From Setoptus koraiensis (taxonomy: Eukaryota; Animalia; Arthropoda), in the NCBI GenBank assembly GCA_048013815.1, contig CM106586.1, forward strand, positions 3,782,001 to 3,846,000: DNA of 64,000 nt, written 5' to 3'. How positions within the stretch are numbered: position 1 is the stretch's first letter; each line of letters opens with the position of its first letter. A program made the position numbers and the translations under genes. The notes below the pieces were generated by a model that saw only the letters and a list, made by a program, of their open reading frames with translations, did not search any database and was not told the origin of the DNA. Shown in pieces: positions 17,428 to 49,560 of this stretch.

Positions 17428-19540
17428 ATGGACAGACTAAATAGTGTCGAGATGTCAGCAAAAGGCGAACAAGTTCAAGACAAAACAAAAAGAGAATCAT
17501 CTGGCCAGAGGACAAAAGACAAGAGCGGCCAAGATAGCTCAAGTGATCAAATACAAACAACAAGAATCACAACTGTTAATAGAGAAAAATCCTCACTAGC
17601 TTCTAATTATGACAGACACAAACAATCGCAAGCTATCAATGAGAACAATACCAGCACCATGTCAACTGTCTCACCATTTGCTATTGCACAATTGCTGAAA
17701 GATTGTATATCATCGAACGATAGTTTCAAAAATAGCAAATCAATGTCTGGCCCACAAACAAATGACATGAATGTGTCGGCAGCACCAGCGGCTCGTCACC
17801 ATCAGCAGTTACATTCGAATCAATTGTCGCAGCAGCAAATCAACGCCAGATCATCTTCCGATCATTCGACACAATCAAAGACAAATGCAAATCCTAACCT
17901 ATATTGTCAGCAGCAGCCCATCAAGACGGCACCGACAGATATAGGTTTGCGTCAAACTGCATTCAATGCAATATTCGACAAAACGAAAATTGCAACCTCT
18001 ATACCTCAGCAACATCAACAGTTATTATCCAACTCGCACCATCTTCAGCAACAATATTTTCAACAATTGATGGTGGCCGCGGCTGCTGCAGCAGGATTAG
18101 ACAAATACAACAATGCTAATGTTGGTAGCAACAGCAGTAATGGTGTTGCCCTTGTCAACAACGAAACAAACACCAACAGTAACAATATAAGCTACAACAA
18201 TGATTTATGCAATAAATATTCAAGTTCGTCGCAACCTTTTTCACACTCACTGGACCCGTATCACCAATGTCAAACCAATAATTGCCCACAAGATCATTGG
18301 CATATGGCAATGCGAAAAATAAATTGTATTGGCTCATCTTCCTACGATGACATAAGTCATCGTCAACTAGATAAACTGCATGATGAGCAATTTGGAAGCA
18401 ACGGAAGGACTATTCAGCAATTTGGAAGTAGTCTACACAACATACAATATAATCATCACCCTAATCAATCTACTTTAGCGTCGTCGACAATCAATAACAG
18501 TAACCCGATGAACAGCAATCACGACAAAAATCACGATGATGGTTATAGGCCGTTAGCTAACTCATCAGTGAACAGTGATCCTACTCATCACAATTTACAG
18601 CTCGATGGACGAAATTTAGAGAGTGGTTGCAAGAAAAGAGAATCAACTGTGCCAACTGTGATAGATCAAAACGCTACTTATGCCTCCTCTCAATGTTTCA
18701 AACAAAACATTTTATCACTAGACAAGGAAGATGTGTGTGAGTCCTCTCGAACCGGAGACAATTTTGAACAAAACCTTCGAGATTCGCTGGATTTAGAGGA
18801 TAGTCGGGCGGAATTTAACGCTGAAATAGATGTTATTGTAGATGTAGTCGATGATATAGCTGATGGTCGAGACAATAATTCCTCGAGACAAAAGGGTGCA
18901 ACTCATCACCAAGAAGAAGAGAAAATATCGGAAAATGAGGATAGCGACTCATTAAGTGGTGTCTCCGCAGATGACGAGTCTATCGACAATGAAAATGAAC
19001 ATGTAAGGAATCTCCATCACCATAACAATAGTAATCATGTCAATCGGCATATCAATCAACAAGGATTTAGTCAGCAGATGATAGCAGATATTGCTAGACA
19101 TTCAGCGAATGCCCACCAACATCGTAAAAAGCGTTCCAGAGCAGCCTTCTCTCATGTTCAAGTTTACGAATTGGAAAGAAGATTCACCCATCAAAGATAC
19201 CTTAGCGGCCAAGAAAGGTCAGATTTGGCAAAAAGACTCAAGTTGACCGAGACACAAGTAAAGATATGGTTTCAGGTGAGTACTATGATGACTAAAATAT
19301 GTAAGATGTCCATTCACAACTTTGGGCGATTTGAGAACTAATCTCTCTTTGATTTGTTTCAAAAATGTATTTGCATCAAATAATCTAAATCTATAGAATC
19401 GTCGTTACAAGGCAAAGAGAAAATTATTGCAGCAAAACTTCCTTTTGACAAGTCATCATCATCATCACCCGGGTCAAGCCTATCATCCGCCTTCATGCTC
19501 AGATCAATTGTCAGGAATAAATTACCAGTTTGGATATTAG
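17428..19540 (+). CDS. bap: NK3-class homeobox protein bagpipe/NKX3-2; exons 17428-19275 and 19397-19540, about 663 aa
   Basis: Homeodomain [51 protein letters not shown]|NRRYKAKRK has NK-type Tyr54. GTGAGT donor at 19276 and CTATAG acceptor ending 19396. An eh1/TN-like SPFAIAQLL lies near 17671. Confidence 0.92.
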
Positions 19541-19635: not shown

Positions 19636-20559
19636 TCAATCCTGTAAATTAACGCACTCCGCTTTATTAGGAGCCTGTTTGCGTTTGGGTATAGCCTGCC
19701 TGAGAGCTTCTTCCCAGGTTATACCTGGTGTCCCGGTGATTAGTAACAATATCTCAAATACAGCAAAGGTGGACAGTATATGACGCTGAATCAGCTTAAC
19801 ATGGGAATCAATTGGAAGCCTGGCAGTTTTAACGCCGGATTCTATTGCACGCTTATGACATAAGCCCTTGTGTCTATTATGATCAACTAAACCACCAATA
19901 ACGAATACATTTGTACCACCGTGGATAATATCATCTATTTCAGGCAATGTGTTCTCAGAATCACCTGACATGTAGACAATGTGATCACAGCTATTAGTAA
20001 TGTTATGAGGTCCGTTGTTTCCTTTCAATTCATCGCTCTTATTTGAAAATAAATTTAGATAGCTATCGGCGCATTTGTGAATGTCCCAGTTTATATAACC
20101 AGGTTGGCTTTTATCCATATGCTCTTTTATCTTTCCATGTAATGATGTGAGATATAGCTGGCAAGGCTGTTCAAATTTTCTGTTTGTCGCATAGATTCTT
20201 CCGATTTGTTTTACTAATTTGTTCATCTCGGCGTCTTCCATGAATTCGTTGAAGTCTAAATCTATCACAATGGTGAATTTATTTTTTGAGTCTTTCATCA
20301 AAGTGTTTCGTTTAGCTAAGCATGGGATTTCAGTGACACCACAATCGTTCTGCTTGCTAGCAGCTCTTTTCGCCTTCTTCTTTAGTCTCTCAAGACGTCT
20401 TCGCTCGGGCAATTGGGCCAGCCATTCCTGTCGTTTCCTCAGTTTTTTAGCCTGGGTTTTAGATATAGTTGGACATGGAACATCTTCCTCACCCTGTACA
20501 CCGTTTTCCTTGGGAGTCTGCGACTGGTATGCCTCAGCCTCTGGATAAATAGAATTCAT
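19636..20559 (-). CDS. TRMT10A: tRNA m1G9 methyltransferase TRMT10 (TRM10A-like), intronless, about 307 aa from first ATG
   Basis: SKTQAKKLRKRQEW, IVIDLDFNEFM, YATNRK, VYMSGDSENTL, FVIGGLVDHNRHKGLC, TARLPI and WEEALRQAIPKRK. The ORF-track start at 20592 is TTG and the first ATG is 20559. Confidence 0.92.
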   Translation of the reverse strand: MNSIYPEAEAYQSQTPKENGVQGEEDVPCPTISKTQAKKLRKRQEWLAQLPERRRLERLKKKAKRAASKQNDCGVTEIPCLAKRNTLMKDSKNKFTIVIDLDFNEFMEDAEMNKLVKQIGRIYATNRKFEQPCQLYLTSLHGKIKEHMDKSQPGYINWDIHKCADSYLNLFSNKSDELKGNNGPHNITNSCDHIVYMSGDSENTLPEIDDIIHGGTNVFVIGGLVDHNRHKGLCHKRAIESGVKTARLPIDSHVKLIQRHILSTFAVFEILLLITGTPGITWEEALRQAIPKRKQAPNKAECVNLQD

Positions 20560-20985
20560 GTCTAGCTGGAAATATATGTTCTTGAAACCCAAATGGGAAT
20601 TCAGATTTCTTAAATCACATGTTCATCACGCTGATTGTTTGATGTGGCAGATGCAATTTTATTTTCTCGTGTGACGCTTTACGCGTGGTGAAATTGTTGA
20701 ACTGCTGGAAAATTGTTCACGAGTGAATGTGAACTGTAAACATCTGTGCATTCCGTTACAGAGGAATCATATTCCCAGTGTGAATATTCGTGCCGGGAGA
20801 TTCATCCATGAATAAATTTCTCCTCGTGCACATGCTCAAGTATTTCATGCAGTACGTGTATAAATAACCGCGAACGAGTCTACAATATTGAATATTTATG
20901 ATTGGTTATAGATATTACTAATAATTGTGAGTAAGTTTATTTCATCCGATCATTACAACCATAACACAATTTATCAGAATACATC
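20560..20985. promoter_or_regulatory. Probable bidirectional promoter for TRMT10 and RFC2
   Basis: Divergent start codons are about 430 bp apart. Confidence 0.55.
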
Positions 20986-41339: not shown

Positions 41340-42302
41340 ATGGATGAATCAACTATTAACCATATGCCAACAAGTAGTACATCTGACGAACGCTCAAAGT
41401 TGCTGAAAGGTGACCTTAAACGGAAACGAGACAATAATGAAAGATGCACTGAGATTCGTCATTGCTGCCTATTCATATTCATCATGATTACGATTCTGGG
41501 CGCCTTGATTGGTCTATTCTTTCTAGTTAAATTGACATTTGATGGATGGTCCGACGAATCGTGTCAATTGATACGTTATACGCATATGCACCATAGAAAT
41601 AAAAGCATAGTAAAGAATGAGTCAAACTTGAGCAAAACTCTCCTATCCATCAAGACGTCGATCGGTTTGGACAAGAAGAGCAAAGGTTCGGGCAATTGTT
41701 CTTGTAAAGACATTCATAACGAAGAAAAACCAATCAGACAGAAGGAATCAAATCAATCGCAACCGTATTCTTATATGCAGAATATGGTTAGCACAGACAA
41801 TTTGGTTAAGCTGGACTTCCGAGGCTATGTTATTATAGAGGATCTTACACACAAATATACGTTTGTATCGAATTTAGGCAGCAAAGCTATTCTAACTCAT
41901 ACTCTAGAGAGAAATGAACCTACCCTTGCGGTCGATTTCCATTGTGGTGAAATCGTTTTCCATATCAACACAGATCTGAATAATTCATCAAGAAAATATG
42001 CAACAATAATGATAACGGGTAAGACAAACAGTGGCATAATTTATGGACACAGAGAGTTCCTTGAATGGCGCACGCCGACACTCCCGAAGCCATTATTTCT
42101 CAATATCATAGATAAAGAACACTACTACTGTGACGAGGAGAGAAATTTGAAATTGTTGATACACAAAGAGACCAACTTCCAATTGACTCTGGTTCTACAG
42201 CACTTGGAACTGGAAATCTATCGTCCGTCTAAGCAGGACAGGGATAAATTTGCAACACCAAGAGGTAGGTGTACTGACTGTCATGATGACACAATGAAAT
42301 AA
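41340..42302 (+). CDS. Single-pass membrane protein, probably type II, with a LAMP-like luminal domain
   Basis: Cytosolic-type DERSKLL, a basic run, then a hydrophobic helix at about residues 42-64. C-terminal PTLAVDFHCGEIVF and HYYCDEERNLKL...LVLQHLELEIY...F...C..C resemble LAMP-domain spacing. There is no C-terminal TM. Confidence 0.5.
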   Translation: MDESTINHMPTSSTSDERSKLLKGDLKRKRDNNERCTEIRHCCLFIFIMITILGALIGLFFLVKLTFDGWSDESCQLIRYTHMHHRNKSIVKNESNLSKTLLSIKTSIGLDKKSKGSGNCSCKDIHNEEKPIRQKESNQSQPYSYMQNMVSTDNLVKLDFRGYVIIEDLTHKYTFVSNLGSKAILTHTLERNEPTLAVDFHCGEIVFHINTDLNNSSRKYATIMITGKTNSGIIYGHREFLEWRTPTLPKPLFLNIIDKEHYYCDEERNLKLLIHKETNFQLTLVLQHLELEIYRPSKQDRDKFATPRGRCTDCHDDTMK

Positions 42303-44298: not shown

Positions 44299-45645
44299 AT
44301 GCAATCTAGACGAAGTGGTACCGAGGATAACCCGAGGAACTCCAATCAATCTTCCGAAGGTAATGGGGGCAAAGTTCATCACGTCCCAATATTCGTTGAG
44401 TCTCGCGGAAACACACTTGATGGTAGAGGCACTAGGGAGAGTTCGGGTCATAGGGATGGAGATCGGAATGAGCAACCAAGATTCAATAGTTTCACTACTT
44501 CGGCGAACCAATTGAACTTTGATGATCCTATTAATTCAAACCCAGCTTTCTCTCAGTATCGCCAATCACCGCCTTCCTTCTTCAATCAAAGCAGAAGCAA
44601 TAAAGGAGGATTTCCAAGTGCATTTGATCCGAACAAAATTTGGAATCGTTCGGAGAGTAGTTCACCAGAGTTTTCGTCTAACTTCACTACTTATAGAGAG
44701 CCTAGAATCTTCGACAACGATCCATATATGGGTGCTTTTAGTCCTGGCAAGAGTCAAAGATACGATTATTCCGGGCAGCCTGGATCTCAACAAACTCAGA
44801 ATGACTCTGCTCGCGGAACAGAGGGAGGATATAACAATCGCAAAACAACTGAACCTCTTCATCGTATGAATAGAAGGTTCGAGAAAAACTCTCGATCACC
44901 GAGTCAATCAGAGCCGGATACACCCAAATCTACTGTGATCCATGTTCCATCTCCACTTTCGGAATCGAGGGACAACGTGACCATTGTGCCTATTAGTGGT
45001 AAGAAAGCCGACTCACCTGAGGACCGACCTCCAAAGGTTATACCACTTTATTCACCAGAACCAACTGAACCTCAATCTCCTCCGCTATCAACTACACCTA
45101 TACCATTACCGCCACCGCCGAGTCTATGCAAAGCGACAGAATCAAAAGAAAAAAAATCTACATCTAATGCCATACCGTCAAGCACAATACCTCAAGAGAA
45201 AGTATTAGCAGCAGAGCCTGTACCGATCGATGAGATGTCAATAGCAAAATCTGATACACCTATTCCAATGCCACCTCCAGCTTCTGCTTCAGATCGAGAG
45301 CAACTACAACATGGGCATAGTTCGGACAAATCGCACCTGGATTCAAGCAAGCAGGACCATAGCTCTTGCGACAAAGGCGAGTCCATTCAACTGATTGCAA
45401 TCGAGAAAGTTGAAGCTGAAGCCAAGACATTATTGGCTGAAATCACTGCAACCAGTGATATGACATATAGAGACAAACAGTACAGATACTTGGACGAAAT
45501 GTTAACACGTTGCATGCTTAGACTAGACAAGATTGACTGTAGCTCTAACGAGGCGCTACGTCAAGCTCGTAAAGCTGCAATCAGAAGTGTTAATCAAGCC
45601 ATTAACCAACTAGAGTCCAAGATAGACGGTAGTTCGGACAAATGA
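44299..45645 (+). CDS. BAG-domain co-chaperone (BAG3/starvin-like), intronless
   Basis: C-terminal BAG domain (QYRYLDEMLTRCMLRLDKID...RQARKAAIRSVNQAINQLESK), IPV-like motifs (HVPIFVE, VIHVP, TIVPI, KVIPL) and PxxP-rich tracts. Confidence 0.85.
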   Translation: MQSRRSGTEDNPRNSNQSSEGNGGKVHHVPIFVESRGNTLDGRGTRESSGHRDGDRNEQPRFNSFTTSANQLNFDDPINSNPAFSQYRQSPPSFFNQSRSNKGGFPSAFDPNKIWNRSESSSPEFSSNFTTYREPRIFDNDPYMGAFSPGKSQRYDYSGQPGSQQTQNDSARGTEGGYNNRKTTEPLHRMNRRFEKNSRSPSQSEPDTPKSTVIHVPSPLSESRDNVTIVPISGKKADSPEDRPPKVIPLYSPEPTEPQSPPLSTTPIPLPPPPSLCKATESKEKKSTSNAIPSSTIPQEKVLAAEPVPIDEMSIAKSDTPIPMPPPASASDREQLQHGHSSDKSHLDSSKQDHSSCDKGESIQLIAIEKVEAEAKTLLAEITATSDMTYRDKQYRYLDEMLTRCMLRLDKIDCSSNEALRQARKAAIRSVNQAINQLESKIDGSSDK

Positions 45646-45941: not shown

Positions 45942-47312
45942 TCAAATGAAATGTTCGACGTTATTTTCTAGCTCCATTAGTTCCTCATTAACTTCATCAA
46001 CATTGAGTTCATCAAGTGTTAGAGTTGGTATTAAAAGGTCGATATCATGATTATCTTGAATTATATTAGGTCCAGAGAGATTTTGTTGGCTTATGGCTGT
46101 TCTCGTATCTCCATAAAGATTATTAACTGTACCATCGCTGTCCCAATAAGGATGAGTGTGGGCGCATGGACTGAGAACTGAATCATTACTGGTTTGTCGT
46201 ATATGATAATTAGTTTGATTTAACCCTCCATTAGAGTTATGAATAAAAGGATGATTGGTGCAACTAGTAGACCTCTCTATTTCGAAACCTGCATTTCTTA
46301 TGATACCCTCGCGTTTTATCATCCTCACTCTATCTTTCTCTAGATCTATTAGGTTTTCCCGTGTTAAATATGATCCTGACGAGGATGGTCTATTATCACT
46401 ACTGCTGTAAACTGTCGATGCTGATTGAGTATGTTGATGAAATGATAGCCGCGCCTGTGGTTGATGTATCGGTTGCTGTTGTTGCTGATGAGGTTGAGAT
46501 GGTGGTTGCGGTTGGTGTTGCAGCGTCTGGTGTGGTGAAGGTTGGTGAGGAGATTGGTGTTGTGGTTGTGGCTGGTGTTGCGAAGGTTGGTGTAATGATG
46601 GTGGTTGGTGTTGAGGTTGAGGTGGTGGTTGATGTTGTGTAAGCAGCTGTTGGGGCTGCGGTTGCGGCTGAAGTTGTGTTGGCTGATGTTGAGGTGGTTG
46701 TGGTTGGATTTGTTGTTGTTGTTGCTGAGGCAATGCTGGTTGATGTTGTTGTTGGTGTATGTGATGATGGTGTTGGTGGTGTGAGCGTTGATGTGTGTGC
46801 TGTTGGTAAGGTTGTGGTTGATGTTGCTGCTGGTATTGTTGTTGTAAATGAATTTGCCAATTTAATTGATTTTGATTGTTGGGCTCATTTAGAATTGCAG
46901 GAGATGAATATAAGCGAGTATGATTGACTCTTGGCGCTGGTTGCGGAGCCACCTGTTGCTGTTGTAATTGGGGTTGTTGAGGCTGTTGTTGCTGTGATTG
47001 TGTTTGCGGCGGCGGGGGTGGTGGCTGCTGCTGCTGATGAAGATGATTATTATTATTGTTATTGTTGCTATTGTTGTTGTTGTTGTTGTTGTTGCTGTTG
47101 TTTGTTTTATTATTTAGGTTTGGCTTAAAAAAGGAGGAGGGTAGATCGCGCTCTATCATTGGCTTCTGTTGATTTGGTTTGAAGTGTTGAACTTTGTCAA
47201 AGTCAAATAATTGACCAAAGATCTCATCCCTGGAACCGTATTCCTTGAGTACTCCATTGCCAGTTTGTTGTTCAATAATGTGATTTGTACTACGAGAGCG
47301 ACTGTGGGCCAT
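45942..47312 (-). CDS. yki: Yorkie/YAP-family coactivator lacking WW domains, intronless, 456 aa
   Basis: TEAD-binding block EIFGQLF...KPMIERDLPSSFFKP, 14-3-3 site HTRLYSSP, coiled-coil remnant LEKDRVRMIKREGIIR, degron-like HIRQTSNDS and an N-terminal HSRSRS. Confidence 0.85.
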   Translation of the reverse strand: MAHSRSRSTNHIIEQQTGNGVLKEYGSRDEIFGQLFDFDKVQHFKPNQQKPMIERDLPSSFFKPNLNNKTNNSNNNNNNNNSNNNNNNNHLHQQQQPPPPPPQTQSQQQQPQQPQLQQQQVAPQPAPRVNHTRLYSSPAILNEPNNQNQLNWQIHLQQQYQQQHQPQPYQQHTHQRSHHQHHHHIHQQQHQPALPQQQQQQIQPQPPQHQPTQLQPQPQPQQLLTQHQPPPQPQHQPPSLHQPSQHQPQPQHQSPHQPSPHQTLQHQPQPPSQPHQQQQQPIHQPQARLSFHQHTQSASTVYSSSDNRPSSSGSYLTRENLIDLEKDRVRMIKREGIIRNAGFEIERSTSCTNHPFIHNSNGGLNQTNYHIRQTSNDSVLSPCAHTHPYWDSDGTVNNLYGDTRTAISQQNLSGPNIIQDNHDIDLLIPTLTLDELNVDEVNEELMELENNVEHFI

Positions 47313-47877
47313 TGCTCAATCGATACCGATATCGATTTGGTGTATGATTAATTTAAAGATAATAATAATAATAATTTAGGATTTTAATAATAATTATGAT
47401 GGCAATAATGAAGTGGAGTGTAAATTAAAAAAATAAAGTAATAATAATAAATAGGGAGTCATTGATTGAGGTGAGATGAGAGGCAAGTGAATGGTTGTTG
47501 TGGTGGTCGTGGTTTCAACTGGTGCGCGTTGATGCACACTGCTAATAAGATGGCGACCACCACTGATTAGTGCACACACTAGCCTGTTGCTGCTGACCCT
47601 GCTCAACACCAGAGCACCAGCTACCACAACATCGCCAGCAACCACAGCTATAACAACCAGTGCACGCACGCACACACACAAGAGCGAAGAACAAAATGAT
47701 GATGAGAAAAGAATGTCTTTGTGTGTGTGCGTGCCTGTGTGAGCTGCCCCTCGACAAGAACACACAAGAAAGAGCCACCATGAGCCACCTCGTGAGAGAA
47801 GAGCCTGTTGCTCCCTCTCCCTCAATCGTTTTGTGCCTTCCCCCTCCCCTGGCTTGTTTGTGTGCGTGTGCTACGGA

Positions 47878-47930
47878 CTCTCTCTCTCTCTCTCTGGTAG
47901 AGTCTCCAGTGCAGAGAGAGAGAGAGAGAG
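47878..47930. repeat. Inverted (CT)9 and (AG)9 tracts with a 17-nt spacer, upstream of yki
   Basis: Direct inspection. These are GAGA-type elements followed by TATAAAA on the + strand at 47934. Confidence 0.8.
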
Positions 47931-48798
47931 ACCTATAAAACCAAATGTGACCACAACGACCAACATGCGAACTCTGTGTCCCAATCTCGCCACCCCCCGG
48001 CTGCCGCCCCTCACACCGTCGCTCGCACTGGTTCGTTCGTTACTTGCGTACTGCACACCGAATGCAAAAGCATGCAACAAGCATCATTCGATTCGGCAAT
48101 GACCGATGCGTGGTCAACGCGATTGATTGGTTATTTTGGAAAGCTGCCGCCAGGTTGTGCTTGGCTCTGTTTTGTTGCTGGTGCTGCTGGTGGGCACGCA
48201 CAGCGAACTTGGCCGTTGCCGCCTTCGAACTTCGAACTGTCGCGGCCGCGAAAGTTCCAAGTAAAATTAAATGGGGCACCTCGGCGTCCCATTTAATTTG
48301 AACGGAGCTAGCGCGAGCGATTGGCGATTCTGGCGGGCCAATCAGAACGCTTACTTTAGAACGAATGGTTCGAAATAGTTCGTCGCGGTAAACCGAATAT
48401 TTTGCACAAATAGATCAATTGACAAGAAATGATAAGCCAGAAATTGAGCCAGTGACTAGGGACACATCTATCTGGGCGTGATTACCATTCAAGGCAGATA
48501 AGTATTTTACATCTCATAAACGTACATCGCGTAGCTCGCGTACAATGTTGCTGTCGTTATGTTGCTGCTGTTATGTTGCTGTTGTTGCTGTTTCTTCGTG
48601 TTAAATATCAACGATAATAATGATTATGGTAATAGTGATAATAGTCAGTAATATTGATAGTCATTTGCACCATAAATTGCTTTGTGCTTGATGTTTCGTG
48701 GCGGACACATGTCGAAGCCTTCATAATGTCGATATGTTGTCTATGCTCATCATCTTCCAAACAATCGCTTTGAGGTCGTCGTATCACGGCATTTGCAC

Positions 48799-49560
48799 TC
48801 ACAAGATCATACTCTTGAATAGATTAGCGTTAGAATATAAATCCGAGTTGAAATGACGTATAGTCTTGCCAGCCCACCTATATGAATAGTAAACGGTGAA
48901 AACAAGAAAGATGATGAGATCAATGCCAGTTCACGTTGACGCCGATAATCGACCTGTTCTGTATCTAGCTTACCTGTCGGTGTAAAACGGGCTAGACTTG
49001 TCTTGGTACTCAAATTCCTCTGAGTCTGTTAGTGTTGAGGCTTTGTTGGGCAAATTCGGCCTGTATGATTGTGGATTTATGGAACCCAACGATTGTCTCC
49101 TGTTTGCTGATGAGCTGCTCCAGTTGTCATCTGATAGGGATGCATTAAATGATGACCTGTATATTATGTCGGGGGTGTTGTTTGCACGACGCGCAGGAAC
49201 AAACAATCCCAATTCGGTATCGAAATCCGTTAAATTATCGAATCGTTGTCGTGTTATTAATGGTTCATTATGATTATTGTTTGAGAGTATTGTTCTAGAA
49301 TTGTTATTGTTATTAGTAGTACTAGTTGTTATAGTAGTATTATTGTCTTGTTGATTGCTAATAGATGGTAAATACCCCGTATTTGCATTCCTGACAGACC
49401 ATGGTAATTCTGTGTTGAATTTTCTGCTGTCAATTTCGCCTATTTTGTCACTATACAACGAATTGCCGTACTCTACATTTTTACCATAAATTGTTGAATG
49501 AGGTCGCTTCCAAACTTTAGGTACAAGAATCTTCTTTGAATTTGTGCTTGTTGAGGCCAT
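48799..49560 (-). CDS. Short protein with an N-terminal motif reminiscent of arthropod mini-paramyosin-type muscle proteins; probable exons 49560-48974 and 48877-48799
   Basis: KVWKRPHSTIYGKNVEYGNSLY...ID resembles a recalled W-x-R-P-x-x-x-I-Y-x-x-N-x-x-Y-G motif. AG|GTAAG at 48973 and a pyrimidine-rich acceptor ending 48878 define a 96-nt intron that removes the ORF-track stop. Confidence 0.4.

What the first reader, a model, noticed from the sequence alone, without database searches (positions are those of the whole stretch)
45942..47312. Yorkie/YAP with no WW domain
Seen: one uninterrupted ORF carries the TEAD interface (LPSSFFKP, residues 57-64), HxRxxS sites (HSRSRS, HTRLYS at 131-136, HIRQTS) and a coiled-coil remnant. 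The region where WW domains belong is replaced by about 150 aa of poly-Q/P/H. The protein has only two Trp, about 200 residues apart, and no intron through which a WW exon could enter. Established: Yki/YAP WW domains bind PPxY partners (Warts/LATS, Expanded/AMOT, Wbp2, NcoA6) and are needed for normal activity. Inference: either a rewired Hippo output driven by a prion-like low-complexity region, or a dominant-negative Scalloped-binding paralogue.
Basis: partly seen in the sequence, partly recalled or inferred. Interest (0 to 1): 0.82.

Follow-up and report, generated by a model that had tools for sequence, protein, structure and literature searches.

The report
Yorkie-like mite gene lacking WW domains
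A tiny plant-feeding mite keeps, under strong selection, a Yorkie/YAP-type growth-control gene that has its DNA-factor docking site and kinase control sites but has replaced the two WW modules, thought essential in this family, with a glutamine-rich disordered stretch.

Summary
The window has one uninterrupted 456-codon ORF at 45942-47312 on the minus strand. It carries a YAP-type omega-loop (PMIERDLPSSFFKP, residues 51-64) and three HxRxxS sites, where 0.18 are expected by chance. It has only two Trp (152 and 390), no Pfam WW domain, and no WW-like exon anywhere in the 64 kb.

Ordinary homology searches found nothing except C-terminal fragments from two close relatives. Motif-level tests are decisive. 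The only PDB hits to the loop are YAP1 TEAD-binding peptides. Five YAP hallmark blocks chain in YAP order with z of about 10.

Against a sister species, dN/dS is 0.08, compared with 0.24 for the neighbouring gene. The gene is therefore real and constrained, including its Q/P/H tract.

I read it as a Yorkie/YAP-derived Scalloped/TEAD cofactor. It probably remains under Warts, 14-3-3 and degron control but has lost all PPxY-mediated contacts.

Two things are unresolved. I could not tell whether it is the mite's only yorkie or a paralogue, because the rest of the genome was out of reach. I also have no N-terminal comparator.

The scan noted two other "WW-less YAP-like" ORFs elsewhere in this genome. 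Neither has been verified.

Verdict: a new variant of a known kind.

The parts
45942..47312 (-). Whole coding sequence, 456 aa plus stop, with no interruption
   Evidence: dN/dS is 0.083 against sister locus L001.
47289..47306 (-). HSRSRS (residues 3-8), an N-terminal LATS/Warts-type HxRxxS consensus site
   Evidence: Motif only; no comparator sequence is available.
47205..47231 (-). Candidate alpha-1 helix of the TEAD-binding domain (residues 28-36, RDEIFGQLF), with an FxxLF core at 32-36
   Evidence: AF2 predicts a helix at 28-35. There are 14 residues between F36 and P51, against 15 in the equivalent human YAP spacing. The BLOSUM block score is not significant.
47121..47162 (-). Omega-loop of the TEAD-binding domain (residues 51-64, PMIERDLPSSFFKP). 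It keeps the equivalents of YAP P85, M86, R89, L91, P92, S94, F95, F96, K97 and P98.
   Evidence: The only PDB hits are YAP1 peptides. Smith-Waterman score is 51 against 23.7+-3.9 for shuffles, P about 8e-5. Criteria come from PMC7784741.
46938..47117 (-). Poly-N/Q/P low-complexity spacer (residues 66-125)
46890..46922 (-). HTRLYSSPAIL (residues 131-141), the equivalent of YAP S127 (HVRAHSSPASL). It combines a LATS site with a 14-3-3 mode-I-like RxxSxP motif.
   Evidence: 7 of 11 residues are identical, and this is the best offset in the whole protein. The YAP string is attested.
46425..46862 (-). Q/P/H-rich disordered tract (residues 151-296), occupying the place of the WW1-WW2 region
   Evidence: Composition. 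Short degenerate tandem units. Conserved in frame in L001 and L002, with dN/dS 0.10. No WW by Pfam, regex or fold prediction.
46293..46361 (-). Predicted long helix or coiled coil (residues 318-340). IDLEKDRVRMIKREG at 322-336 matches the start of the YAP coiled coil, LQMEKERLRLKQQEL.
   Evidence: Nearly invariant across three taxa.
46170..46205 (-). HIRQTSNDSVLS (residues 370-381), the equivalent of YAP HSRDESTDSGLS. It combines a LATS site with a CK1/beta-TrCP-type phosphodegron in which Gly is replaced by Val.
   Evidence: 7 of 12 residues are identical, and this is the best offset in the protein. Invariant in L001 and L002. YAP reference.
45948..46001 (-). Acidic amphipathic C-terminal helix (residues 438-455, VDEVNEELMELENNVEHF), a candidate activation segment. 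There is no PDZ-binding end.
   Evidence: AF2 helix with the highest pLDDT in the model. Conserved in relatives.

Best explanation
This is a Yorkie/YAP-derived transcriptional cofactor gene of an eriophyoid-type mite, and most likely its yorkie. It has lost both WW domains, and a 146-residue Q/P/H-rich disordered tract stands in their place.

Inferred mechanism:
- The N-terminal helix plus omega-loop dock onto Scalloped/TEAD.
- Warts/LATS phosphorylates S8, S136 and S375.
- Phospho-S136 (RLYpSSP) recruits 14-3-3 and keeps the protein in the cytoplasm.
- Phospho-S375 primes the adjacent DSVLS degron.
- Activation comes from the Gln-rich tract and the acidic C-terminal helix, not from WW-PPxY recruitment of partners such as NcoA6 or Wbp2.
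- All PPxY-dependent inputs (Expanded, Warts docking, Tgi and others) are gone.

Shown here: the motifs, their order, the absence of WW, and purifying selection. Inferred: TEAD binding, phosphorylation, 14-3-3 binding, the degron function and the source of activation.
For: - Omega-loop: a 21-aa query hits only YAP1 TEAD-binding peptides among 177,635 PDB sequences.
- A-priori probe: human YAP61-99 gives SW 51 against 23.7+-3.9 for shuffles, Gumbel P 8e-5, with a maximum of 31 in 229 other ORF segments of the window.
- Invariant residues: every residue that PMC7784741 calls invariant or critical (P85, M86, R89, L91, S94, F95, F96) is kept. The linker length lies within the published 4-15 aa range.
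- Collinear chain: five YAP blocks score 146 against a shuffle maximum of 105 in 20,000 (z about 10-11), and against a maximum of 84 in 55 real proteins. Four blocks sit at their single best offset and in YAP order.
- LATS-type sites: three HxRxxS sites against 0.18 expected.
- Selection: dN/dS is 0.083 at dS 0.59, compared with 0.238 for the adjacent BAG gene. Indels are in frame.
- Conservation: the C-terminal 240-272 residues, including the degron block, are conserved in two other samples.
- No WW: Pfam at E<=10 finds none. No WW pattern occurs in six frames of 64 kb. AF2 shows no beta fold.
- Context: the eriophyoid Aculops has lost fat, dachs and four-jointed.
Against: - No HMMER-level homology to any Yki/YAP was found. 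phmmer against 1.84 billion representatives returns only a close relative's fragment. Word-based searches were blank.
- The YAP blocks were chosen after I had seen the ORF, so the chain statistic is somewhat inflated.
- The omega-loop match alone (P about 1e-4 per protein) could arise by chance about once per proteome.
- The alpha-1 helix is not supported by alignment score.
- No N-terminal sequence from any relative was obtained, so conservation of the TEAD-binding domain and of the S136 site is unshown.
- The rest of the genome could not be searched for a canonical yki.
- The degron has Val where the canonical DSG has Gly.
Confidence: 0.6

Rival explanations
1. This is a lineage-specific paralogue of yorkie, and a canonical WW-bearing yki lies elsewhere in the genome. 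The WW-less copy would act as a specialised or competing Scalloped partner, possibly a dominant-negative or Expanded-insensitive one.
For: The genome beyond this window could not be searched. Two other WW-less 'YAP-like TEAD binder' ORFs are noted in the same genome (unverified), so omega-loop proteins may form a small family. WW domains as such do exist in this genome (mini-Kibra note).
Against: The protein keeps the complete regulatory set: three LATS sites, a 14-3-3 site, a degron and a C-terminal acidic helix. It is under stronger constraint than its neighbour. That pattern fits a principal effector better than a decoy. None of about 2,390 notes on this genome mentions a canonical Yorkie, which is weak evidence because an ordinary gene would not be flagged.
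Confidence: 0.25
2. The protein is unrelated to Yki and acquired a TEAD-binding omega-loop convergently, or it belongs to another omega-loop family such as Vg/VGLL2 or FAM181.
For: Omega-loops occur outside YAP: in Vg and VGLL2 and in FAM181. There is no HMMER-detectable homology to YAP.
Against: The loop is of YAP type (PM..R.LP.SFFKP), not Vg type (M-S-x3-F-x3-F-W). The helix core is FxxLF, with Leu rather than the Tondu His. Pfam finds neither a Tondu nor a FAM181 domain. Three further YAP-specific blocks follow in the correct order: HxRxxSSPAxL, the coiled-coil start, and HxRxxSxDSxLS.
Confidence: 0.06
3. The result is a gene-model or assembly artefact. The real mRNA would contain WW exons, or the Q/P/H tract would be intronic or a collapsed repeat.
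For: No transcript data were available. Low-complexity CAA/CAG-rich DNA breaks short-read assemblies, and both relatives' contigs end inside the tract.
Against: The tract is open in frame in three independent assemblies. Indels come only in multiples of three, and dN/dS is 0.10. There is no WW-like coding potential in any frame within the 64 kb.
Confidence: 0.05
4. The resemblance is chance, produced by short motifs in a disordered orphan protein.
For: Each motif is short. The PDB E-values are only 0.5-1.3.
Against: The joint collinear chain has z of about 10, with 0 of 20,000 shuffles reaching the observed score. The motifs are invariant in relatives wherever sequence is available.
Confidence: 0.03

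Closest known systems
Yorkie / YAP1 / TAZ (Hippo pathway TEAD coactivators)
   Same: The omega-loop carries all published invariant contact residues. A helix with a PhixxLF core lies at the correct distance upstream. An S127-type site (HxRxxSSPAxL) combines LATS and 14-3-3 motifs. The coiled-coil start matches, and a C-terminal HxRxxS is followed by a DSxLS degron. The order of these elements is the same, and the spacing between the S127-type site and the coiled coil is similar: about 180 residues here against roughly 184 in human YAP (the YAP figure is from memory). Like Drosophila Yki (from memory), it has no PDZ-binding end.
   Different: There is no WW domain, whereas WW plus coiled coil are the most anciently conserved parts of the family (PMC4032125). 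A 146-residue Q/P/H tract stands in their place, and there is a further poly-N/Q spacer. There is no HMMER-detectable similarity to family members. The degron has Val instead of Gly. The helix has Phe at the Leu65 position.
Vestigial / VGLL2 (Tondu domain plus omega-loop)
   Same: These are WW-less TEAD/Sd cofactors with a helix, linker and omega-loop arrangement (PMC7566471).
   Different: Vg has a Tondu beta-strand and helix with a conserved His, and an omega-loop of the form M-S-x3-F-x3-F-W. It lacks LATS, 14-3-3 and degron sites. None of that matches this ORF, and Pfam finds no Tondu domain.
FAM181A/B (vertebrate omega-loop TEAD interactors)
   Same: These proteins are disordered, have no WW domain, and carry an LxxLF motif and an omega-loop.
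   Different: In FAM181B the LxxLF lies 54 residues from the loop. The family is vertebrate-specific and has no YAP-type LATS sites. Pfam gives no hit.
Choanoflagellate TBD-like, WW-less sequences (Salpingoeca rosetta, Monosiga brevicollis)
   Same: They show good similarity to the metazoan YAP TEAD-binding domain but have no WW domain (PMC7784741).
   Different: They are non-metazoan, and in those species other proteins carry the WW domains. No LATS-site architecture is reported for them.

Membership tests
Yki/YAP/TAZ | Omega-loop of the TEAD-binding domain with Pro85, Met86, Arg89, Leu91, Ser94, Phe95 and Phe96 (Arg89 and Ser94 are invariant in all animal YAPs, PMC7784741) | tested here: met
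   Residues 51-64 read PMIERDLPSSFFKP and keep all seven. PDB hits are YAP1 only. SW score has P about 8e-5. Criteria.
Yki/YAP/TAZ | LxxLF alpha-helix, 4-15-residue linker upstream of the omega-loop | tested here: inconclusive
   F32-G-Q-L35-F36 has Phe where Leu65 would be. AF2 predicts a helix at 28-35. Acidic D29 and E30 sit at the helix N-terminus, and the spacing is one residue shorter than in human YAP. However, the block alignment score is not above chance, and there is no comparator.
Yki/YAP/TAZ | At least one WW domain (Pfam PF00397; W-x21-W in the operational definition of PMC7784741) | tested here: not met
   No Pfam hit at E<=10. The only Trp residues are 152 and 390. There is no WW pattern in six frames of the window. 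AF2 gives no beta sheet in the model. Relatives lack WW in the 240-272 residues available.
Yki/YAP/TAZ | Main LATS/Warts site HxRxxS with a 14-3-3 motif (YAP S127, Yki S168) | tested here: met
   HTRLYSSPAIL at 131-141 matches HVRAHSSPASL at 7 of 11 positions, and this is the best offset in the protein. RxxSxP is present. This is a sequence motif only; phosphorylation cannot be tested here.
Yki/YAP/TAZ | Coiled coil C-terminal to the WW region | tested here: met
   AF2 predicts a helix at 318-340. The block at 322-336 matches the YAP coiled-coil start at 5 of 15 positions plus conservative changes, and this is the best offset.
Yki/YAP/TAZ | C-terminal LATS site followed by a CK1/beta-TrCP phosphodegron (HSRDESTDSGLS) | tested here: inconclusive
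   HIRQTSNDSVLS at 370-381 is identical at 7 of 12 positions and invariant in three taxa. The DSG glycine is replaced by Val, so degron function is uncertain.
Yki/YAP/TAZ | Sequence-profile-detectable homology to family members | tested here: not met
   phmmer against 1.84e9 representatives gives only a near-identical fragment. Word-indexed searches were blank. Whole-protein and 51-aa PDB searches were blank.
Yki/YAP/TAZ | Physical binding to TEAD/Scalloped and Hippo-dependent localisation | not testable with these tools
   This needs peptide binding (SPR), reporter and localisation assays.
Vg/VGLL (Tondu) | Tondu beta-strand and helix with a conserved His that hydrogen-bonds to TEAD | tested here: not met
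   No Pfam family hit. The helix core is FGQLF, with Leu at the His position (direct reading; criteria).
FAM181 | FAM181 family domain, with LxxLF distant from the omega-loop | tested here: not met
   No Pfam hit. The helix lies 14 residues before the loop, not 54.

The most novel reading that the evidence does not exclude
This is the mite's only Yorkie. Its WW loss would then be part of a pathway-wide dismantling of the WW-PPxY wiring of Hippo signalling in eriophyoid mites. Fat, Dachs and Four-jointed are published as lost, and unverified notes in this scan report a 'SARAH-only' Salvador. What would remain is a minimal Warts -> Yki -> Scalloped axis, with activation coming from a Gln-rich disordered region. 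That would be a natural experiment showing that WW domains, the most ancient part of the family, are dispensable for Yki function in an animal.
Probability: 0.35. Interest if true: 0.82.

Novelty: new variant of a known kind. Interest (0 to 1): 0.62.

Why it matters
In flies and mammals the WW domains of Yki/YAP are needed for growth promotion. They recruit NcoA6/Trr and Wbp2, and they mediate regulation by Warts, Expanded, AMOT and Tgi. Evolutionary surveys rank them as the oldest and best conserved part of the protein, and one survey used a WW domain as an entry criterion, so it would have missed forms like this one. A WW-less Yki that selection maintains, with its TEAD-binding domain and LATS/14-3-3/degron sites intact, would separate the core phospho-switch from the PPxY network in a living animal. 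It would also allow a direct test of which Yki functions are WW-independent, and of whether a Gln-rich disordered region can replace WW-mediated coactivator recruitment. It also fits the picture of extreme genome and body-plan reduction in eriophyoid mites.

Tried and rejected
- Pfam on the ORF at E<=10 found nothing.
- PDB phmmer found no YAP with the whole ORF, with residues 20-70, with residues 123-151, or with residues 315-391. Only the 21-aa loop query found YAP.
- The search for homologous proteins on residues 300-456 and 1-68 was blank. This was later explained: the relatives exist only as short fragments, below the length filter.
- An exact look-up of the ORF found it not on record.
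- Exhaustive phmmer returned one true fragment plus one low-complexity hit. A decoy test beforehand showed that Q/P/H-rich junk is filtered out.
- Two metagenome scans, with the N-terminal and C-terminal pieces, were blank.
- Synteny through the BAG/Samui neighbour worked only for the close sister, L001. In Halotydeus and another mite the neighbour is VPS18 or a Focal_AT gene, so synteny says nothing about orthology there. P0013 had no DNA available, and P0021 was not on record.
- A second LPESFF at 19696(+) lies antisense to a real ORF and is chance.
- The supplements of the Aculops genome paper held nothing on yki, sd or wts. The SRA run accessions appear in no paper.
- The search of earlier findings by sequence was blank.
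- I considered that 'LNWQ' at 149-152 might be a relic of the WW 'GWE'. The spacing to downstream Y and H does not fit, so I dropped the idea as unsupported.

Full report
**Observation**

The window carries a 456-codon ORF at 45942..47312 on the minus strand. It has no internal stop. An in-frame TGA lies two codons upstream of the ATG, so the ORF cannot extend 5' without splicing.

- LPSSFFKP at residues 57-64.
- HSRSRS at 3-8, HTRLYS at 131-136 and HIRQTS at 370-375. Three HxRxx[ST] sites compare with 0.18 expected from composition-preserving shuffles (P=0.0007).
- Only two Trp, at W152 and W390.
- No PPxY.
- A tract at 151-296 that is 40% Q, 20% P and 17% H, plus a second N/Q/P tract at 66-125.

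TRF shows only short, degenerate tandem units in the tract.

**Is there a hidden WW domain?**

I found none.
- Pfam finds no family in the protein, even at E<=10.
- A six-frame scan of the whole 64 kb for W-x18-25-W-xx-P, and for half-WW patterns, finds nothing credible.
- An AlphaFold2 single-sequence model is essentially disordered (mean pLDDT 42). It has four helices, at 28-35, 147-160, 318-340 and 438-455, and no WW-type three-stranded sheet.

**Is it a real gene?**

The neighbouring convergent gene (44299..45645, plus strand) encodes a BAG-domain protein. Its closest named relatives are arachnid and mite 'Samui' proteins. That agrees with earlier notes calling this genome an eriophyoid-type mite.

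I used this neighbour as a synteny anchor and recovered locus L001 from Logan run SRR33593474. L001 holds the BAG orthologue and, convergent to it, the last 272 codons of an orthologue of the ORF, cut by the contig end. The exhaustive search yielded a third sample, L002 from SRR24908299, with 240 codons.

Comparing the window with L001:
- dN/dS is 0.083 overall.
- It is 0.068 in the C-terminal 156 codons.
- It is 0.10 in the Q/P/H tract.
- dS is 0.53-0.68.
- The BAG gene gives 0.238.

All indels are multiples of three. The ORF is therefore translated and strongly constrained, tract included.

The fragmentary state of the relatives also explains the blank word-indexed searches. Their contigs break in the CAA/CAG-rich DNA, and the called products (128 and 131 aa) fall below the length filter.

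**Is it Yki/YAP?**

Standard homology detection says nothing. phmmer of the whole ORF against 1.84 billion representative proteins finds only the L002 fragment and one low-complexity hit. A decoy test run beforehand showed that the Q-rich tract would not swamp that search. The case therefore rests on short linear motifs, which I tested formally.

1. *PDB search with the loop.* A 21-residue query (residues 50-70) against all 177,635 distinct PDB sequences returns six hits. Every one is a YAP1 TEAD-binding peptide (3JUA, 5OAQ, 6HIK, 8A8R, 9FZA, 8A8Q). The alignment is PMIERDLPSSFFKP against PMRLRKLPDSFFKP, with E of 0.55-1.3.

2. *A-priori probe.* Mesrouze et al. used the 39-residue human YAP61-99 sequence to define YAP homologues across animals (PMC7784741). 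Aligned to the ORF, it gives a Smith-Waterman score of 51. Shuffles of the non-repetitive part give 23.7+-3.9, with 1 of 5,000 reaching the observed score and a Gumbel P of 8e-5. The maximum is 31 across 229 other open segments of the window. On its own, this could arise by chance about once per proteome.

3. *Published invariant residues.* That paper states that Arg89 and Ser94 are conserved in all animal YAPs, that Pro85 is highly conserved and required, that LxxLF is the helix core, and that the linker is 4-15 residues long. The ORF has P51, M52, R55, L57, P58, S60, F61, F62, K63 and P64 at exactly the corresponding positions. It has an F32-x-x-L35-F36 core inside a predicted helix (28-35), preceded by acidic D29 and E30. 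Its linker is one residue shorter than the human one. The helix is not supported by alignment score, so I rate it inconclusive.

4. *Collinear chain of five blocks.* I took five human YAP blocks from tool outputs and papers: alpha-1, the omega-loop, HVRAHSSPASL (S127), the coiled-coil start LQMEKERLRLKQQEL, and HSRDESTDSGLS (S397 plus degron). I scored them as an ordered, ungapped chain.
   - The ORF scores 146.
   - Whole-protein shuffles give 65.7+-7.9, and shuffles of the non-repetitive part give 47.9+-8.6. The maximum is 105 in 20,000.
   - The maximum among 55 real proteins or ORFs is 84.
   - Four blocks sit at their single best offset in the whole protein and in YAP order: omega-loop at 51-65 (10 of 15 identical), HTRLYSSPAIL at 131-141 (7 of 11), IDLEKDRVRMIKREG at 322-336 (5 of 15), and HIRQTSNDSVLS at 370-381 (7 of 12).
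   - I selected the blocks after reading the ORF, so the statistic is optimistic. Three of them are nevertheless the textbook functional elements of YAP, and the margin is very large.

**Rival omega-loop families**

These do not fit. Vg and VGLL2 pair a Tondu helix, with a conserved His, with a loop of the form M-S-x3-F-x3-F-W (PMC7566471). FAM181B has its LxxLF 54 residues from the loop. Neither family has LATS, 14-3-3 or degron sites, and Pfam reports neither family here.

I conclude that the gene derives from yorkie/YAP. It keeps the TEAD-binding domain, the phospho-regulatory sites, the coiled coil and an acidic C-terminal helix. It lacks the WW module, whose place between the S127-type site and the coiled coil (about 180 residues) is taken by the Q/P/H tract.

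**Mechanism (inferred)**

- The protein docks on Scalloped/TEAD through the omega-loop and helix.
- Warts phosphorylates S136, creating a 14-3-3 site (RLYpSSP). It also phosphorylates S375, priming DSVLS as a Slimb/beta-TrCP-type degron. That function is uncertain because Val replaces the canonical Gly.
- Transcriptional activation would come from the Gln-rich tract and the conserved acidic helix at 438-455.
- Without WW domains and without PPxY, all PPxY-mediated contacts are lost. From established knowledge of flies and mammals, these include Expanded, Warts docking, Tgi, Wbp2 and NcoA6.
- The retention of a full regulatory set under strong constraint argues against a simple dominant-negative decoy.

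**Context and limits**

Ikmi et al. report that WW plus coiled coil are the most deeply conserved parts of Yap, reaching back to unicellular relatives of animals (PMC4032125). Mesrouze et al. required a W-x21-W to call a sequence YAP, so WW-less forms were excluded by design. I found no paper describing a natural WW-less Yki.

The Aculops lycopersici genome paper reports loss of fat, dachs and four-jointed (PMC7738191).

Unverified notes from this scan mention the following in the same genome:
- Two other WW-less, LATS-site-less 'YAP-like TEAD binders'. These could be Vg-type proteins.
- A 'SARAH-only' Salvador.
- A tandem-WW 'mini-Kibra'.

I could test none of these. I could not search the rest of the genome for a canonical yki. 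I could not obtain any N-terminal comparator; both metagenome scans were blank. Synteny with the BAG gene is not kept in more distant mites. Orthologue versus paralogue therefore stays open.

**Verdict**

The Yki/YAP identity and the WW absence are supported. The mechanism is inferred. I class it as a new variant of a known kind, of moderately high interest. Interest would rise if this proves to be the only yorkie in the genome.

Noticed in passing
window 44299-45645 (+) and L001 3053-4393: A BAG-domain 'Samui'-like gene lies convergent to the yki-like ORF, with only about 300 bp between the two stop codons. Its dN/dS against the sister species is 0.24, three times that of the yki-like gene. 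All listed arachnid homologues carry only the BAG Pfam domain.
   Followed up: partly
L001 5135-5524 (+) and L002 1-297 (-): Gene callers on the Logan contigs call spurious wrong-strand ORFs inside the CAA/CAG-rich tract and start the true gene at an internal Met. Real orthologues are therefore stored as 128-131-aa fragments. This hides them from length-filtered searches, and other Q-rich genes of this genome are probably affected in the same way.
   Followed up: partly
window 47870-47940: A (CT)n ... (GA)n inverted low-complexity pair, flanked by CA/GT-rich runs, lies about 560-630 bp upstream of the ORF's ATG. It could be a promoter or GAGA-type element. It also produces spurious long ORFs in other frames.
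   Followed up: no
window 48970-49560 (-): An upstream 196-aa ORF, Asn/Ser-rich, has no Pfam family. It is either an orphan gene or part of a larger gene.
   Followed up: no
window 17428-19341 (+): This long Q/N/H-rich ORF ends in a homeodomain sequence (…[21 protein letters not shown]…VKIWFQ) that breaks off right after WFQ. That suggests an intron at the conserved homeobox position in an otherwise intron-poor genome.
   Followed up: no
window 19696 (+): A second LPxSFF hexapeptide (LPESFF) occurs here. It lies antisense to the real ORF at 19636..20592 and is a chance match.
   Followed up: yes
window 41340-42302 (+) and L001 184-1152: A 320-aa ORF with no Pfam family has a called gene of 322 aa at the corresponding place in the sister contig. 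It may be a conserved orphan gene. I inferred the correspondence from position and length only and did not align the sequences.
   Followed up: no
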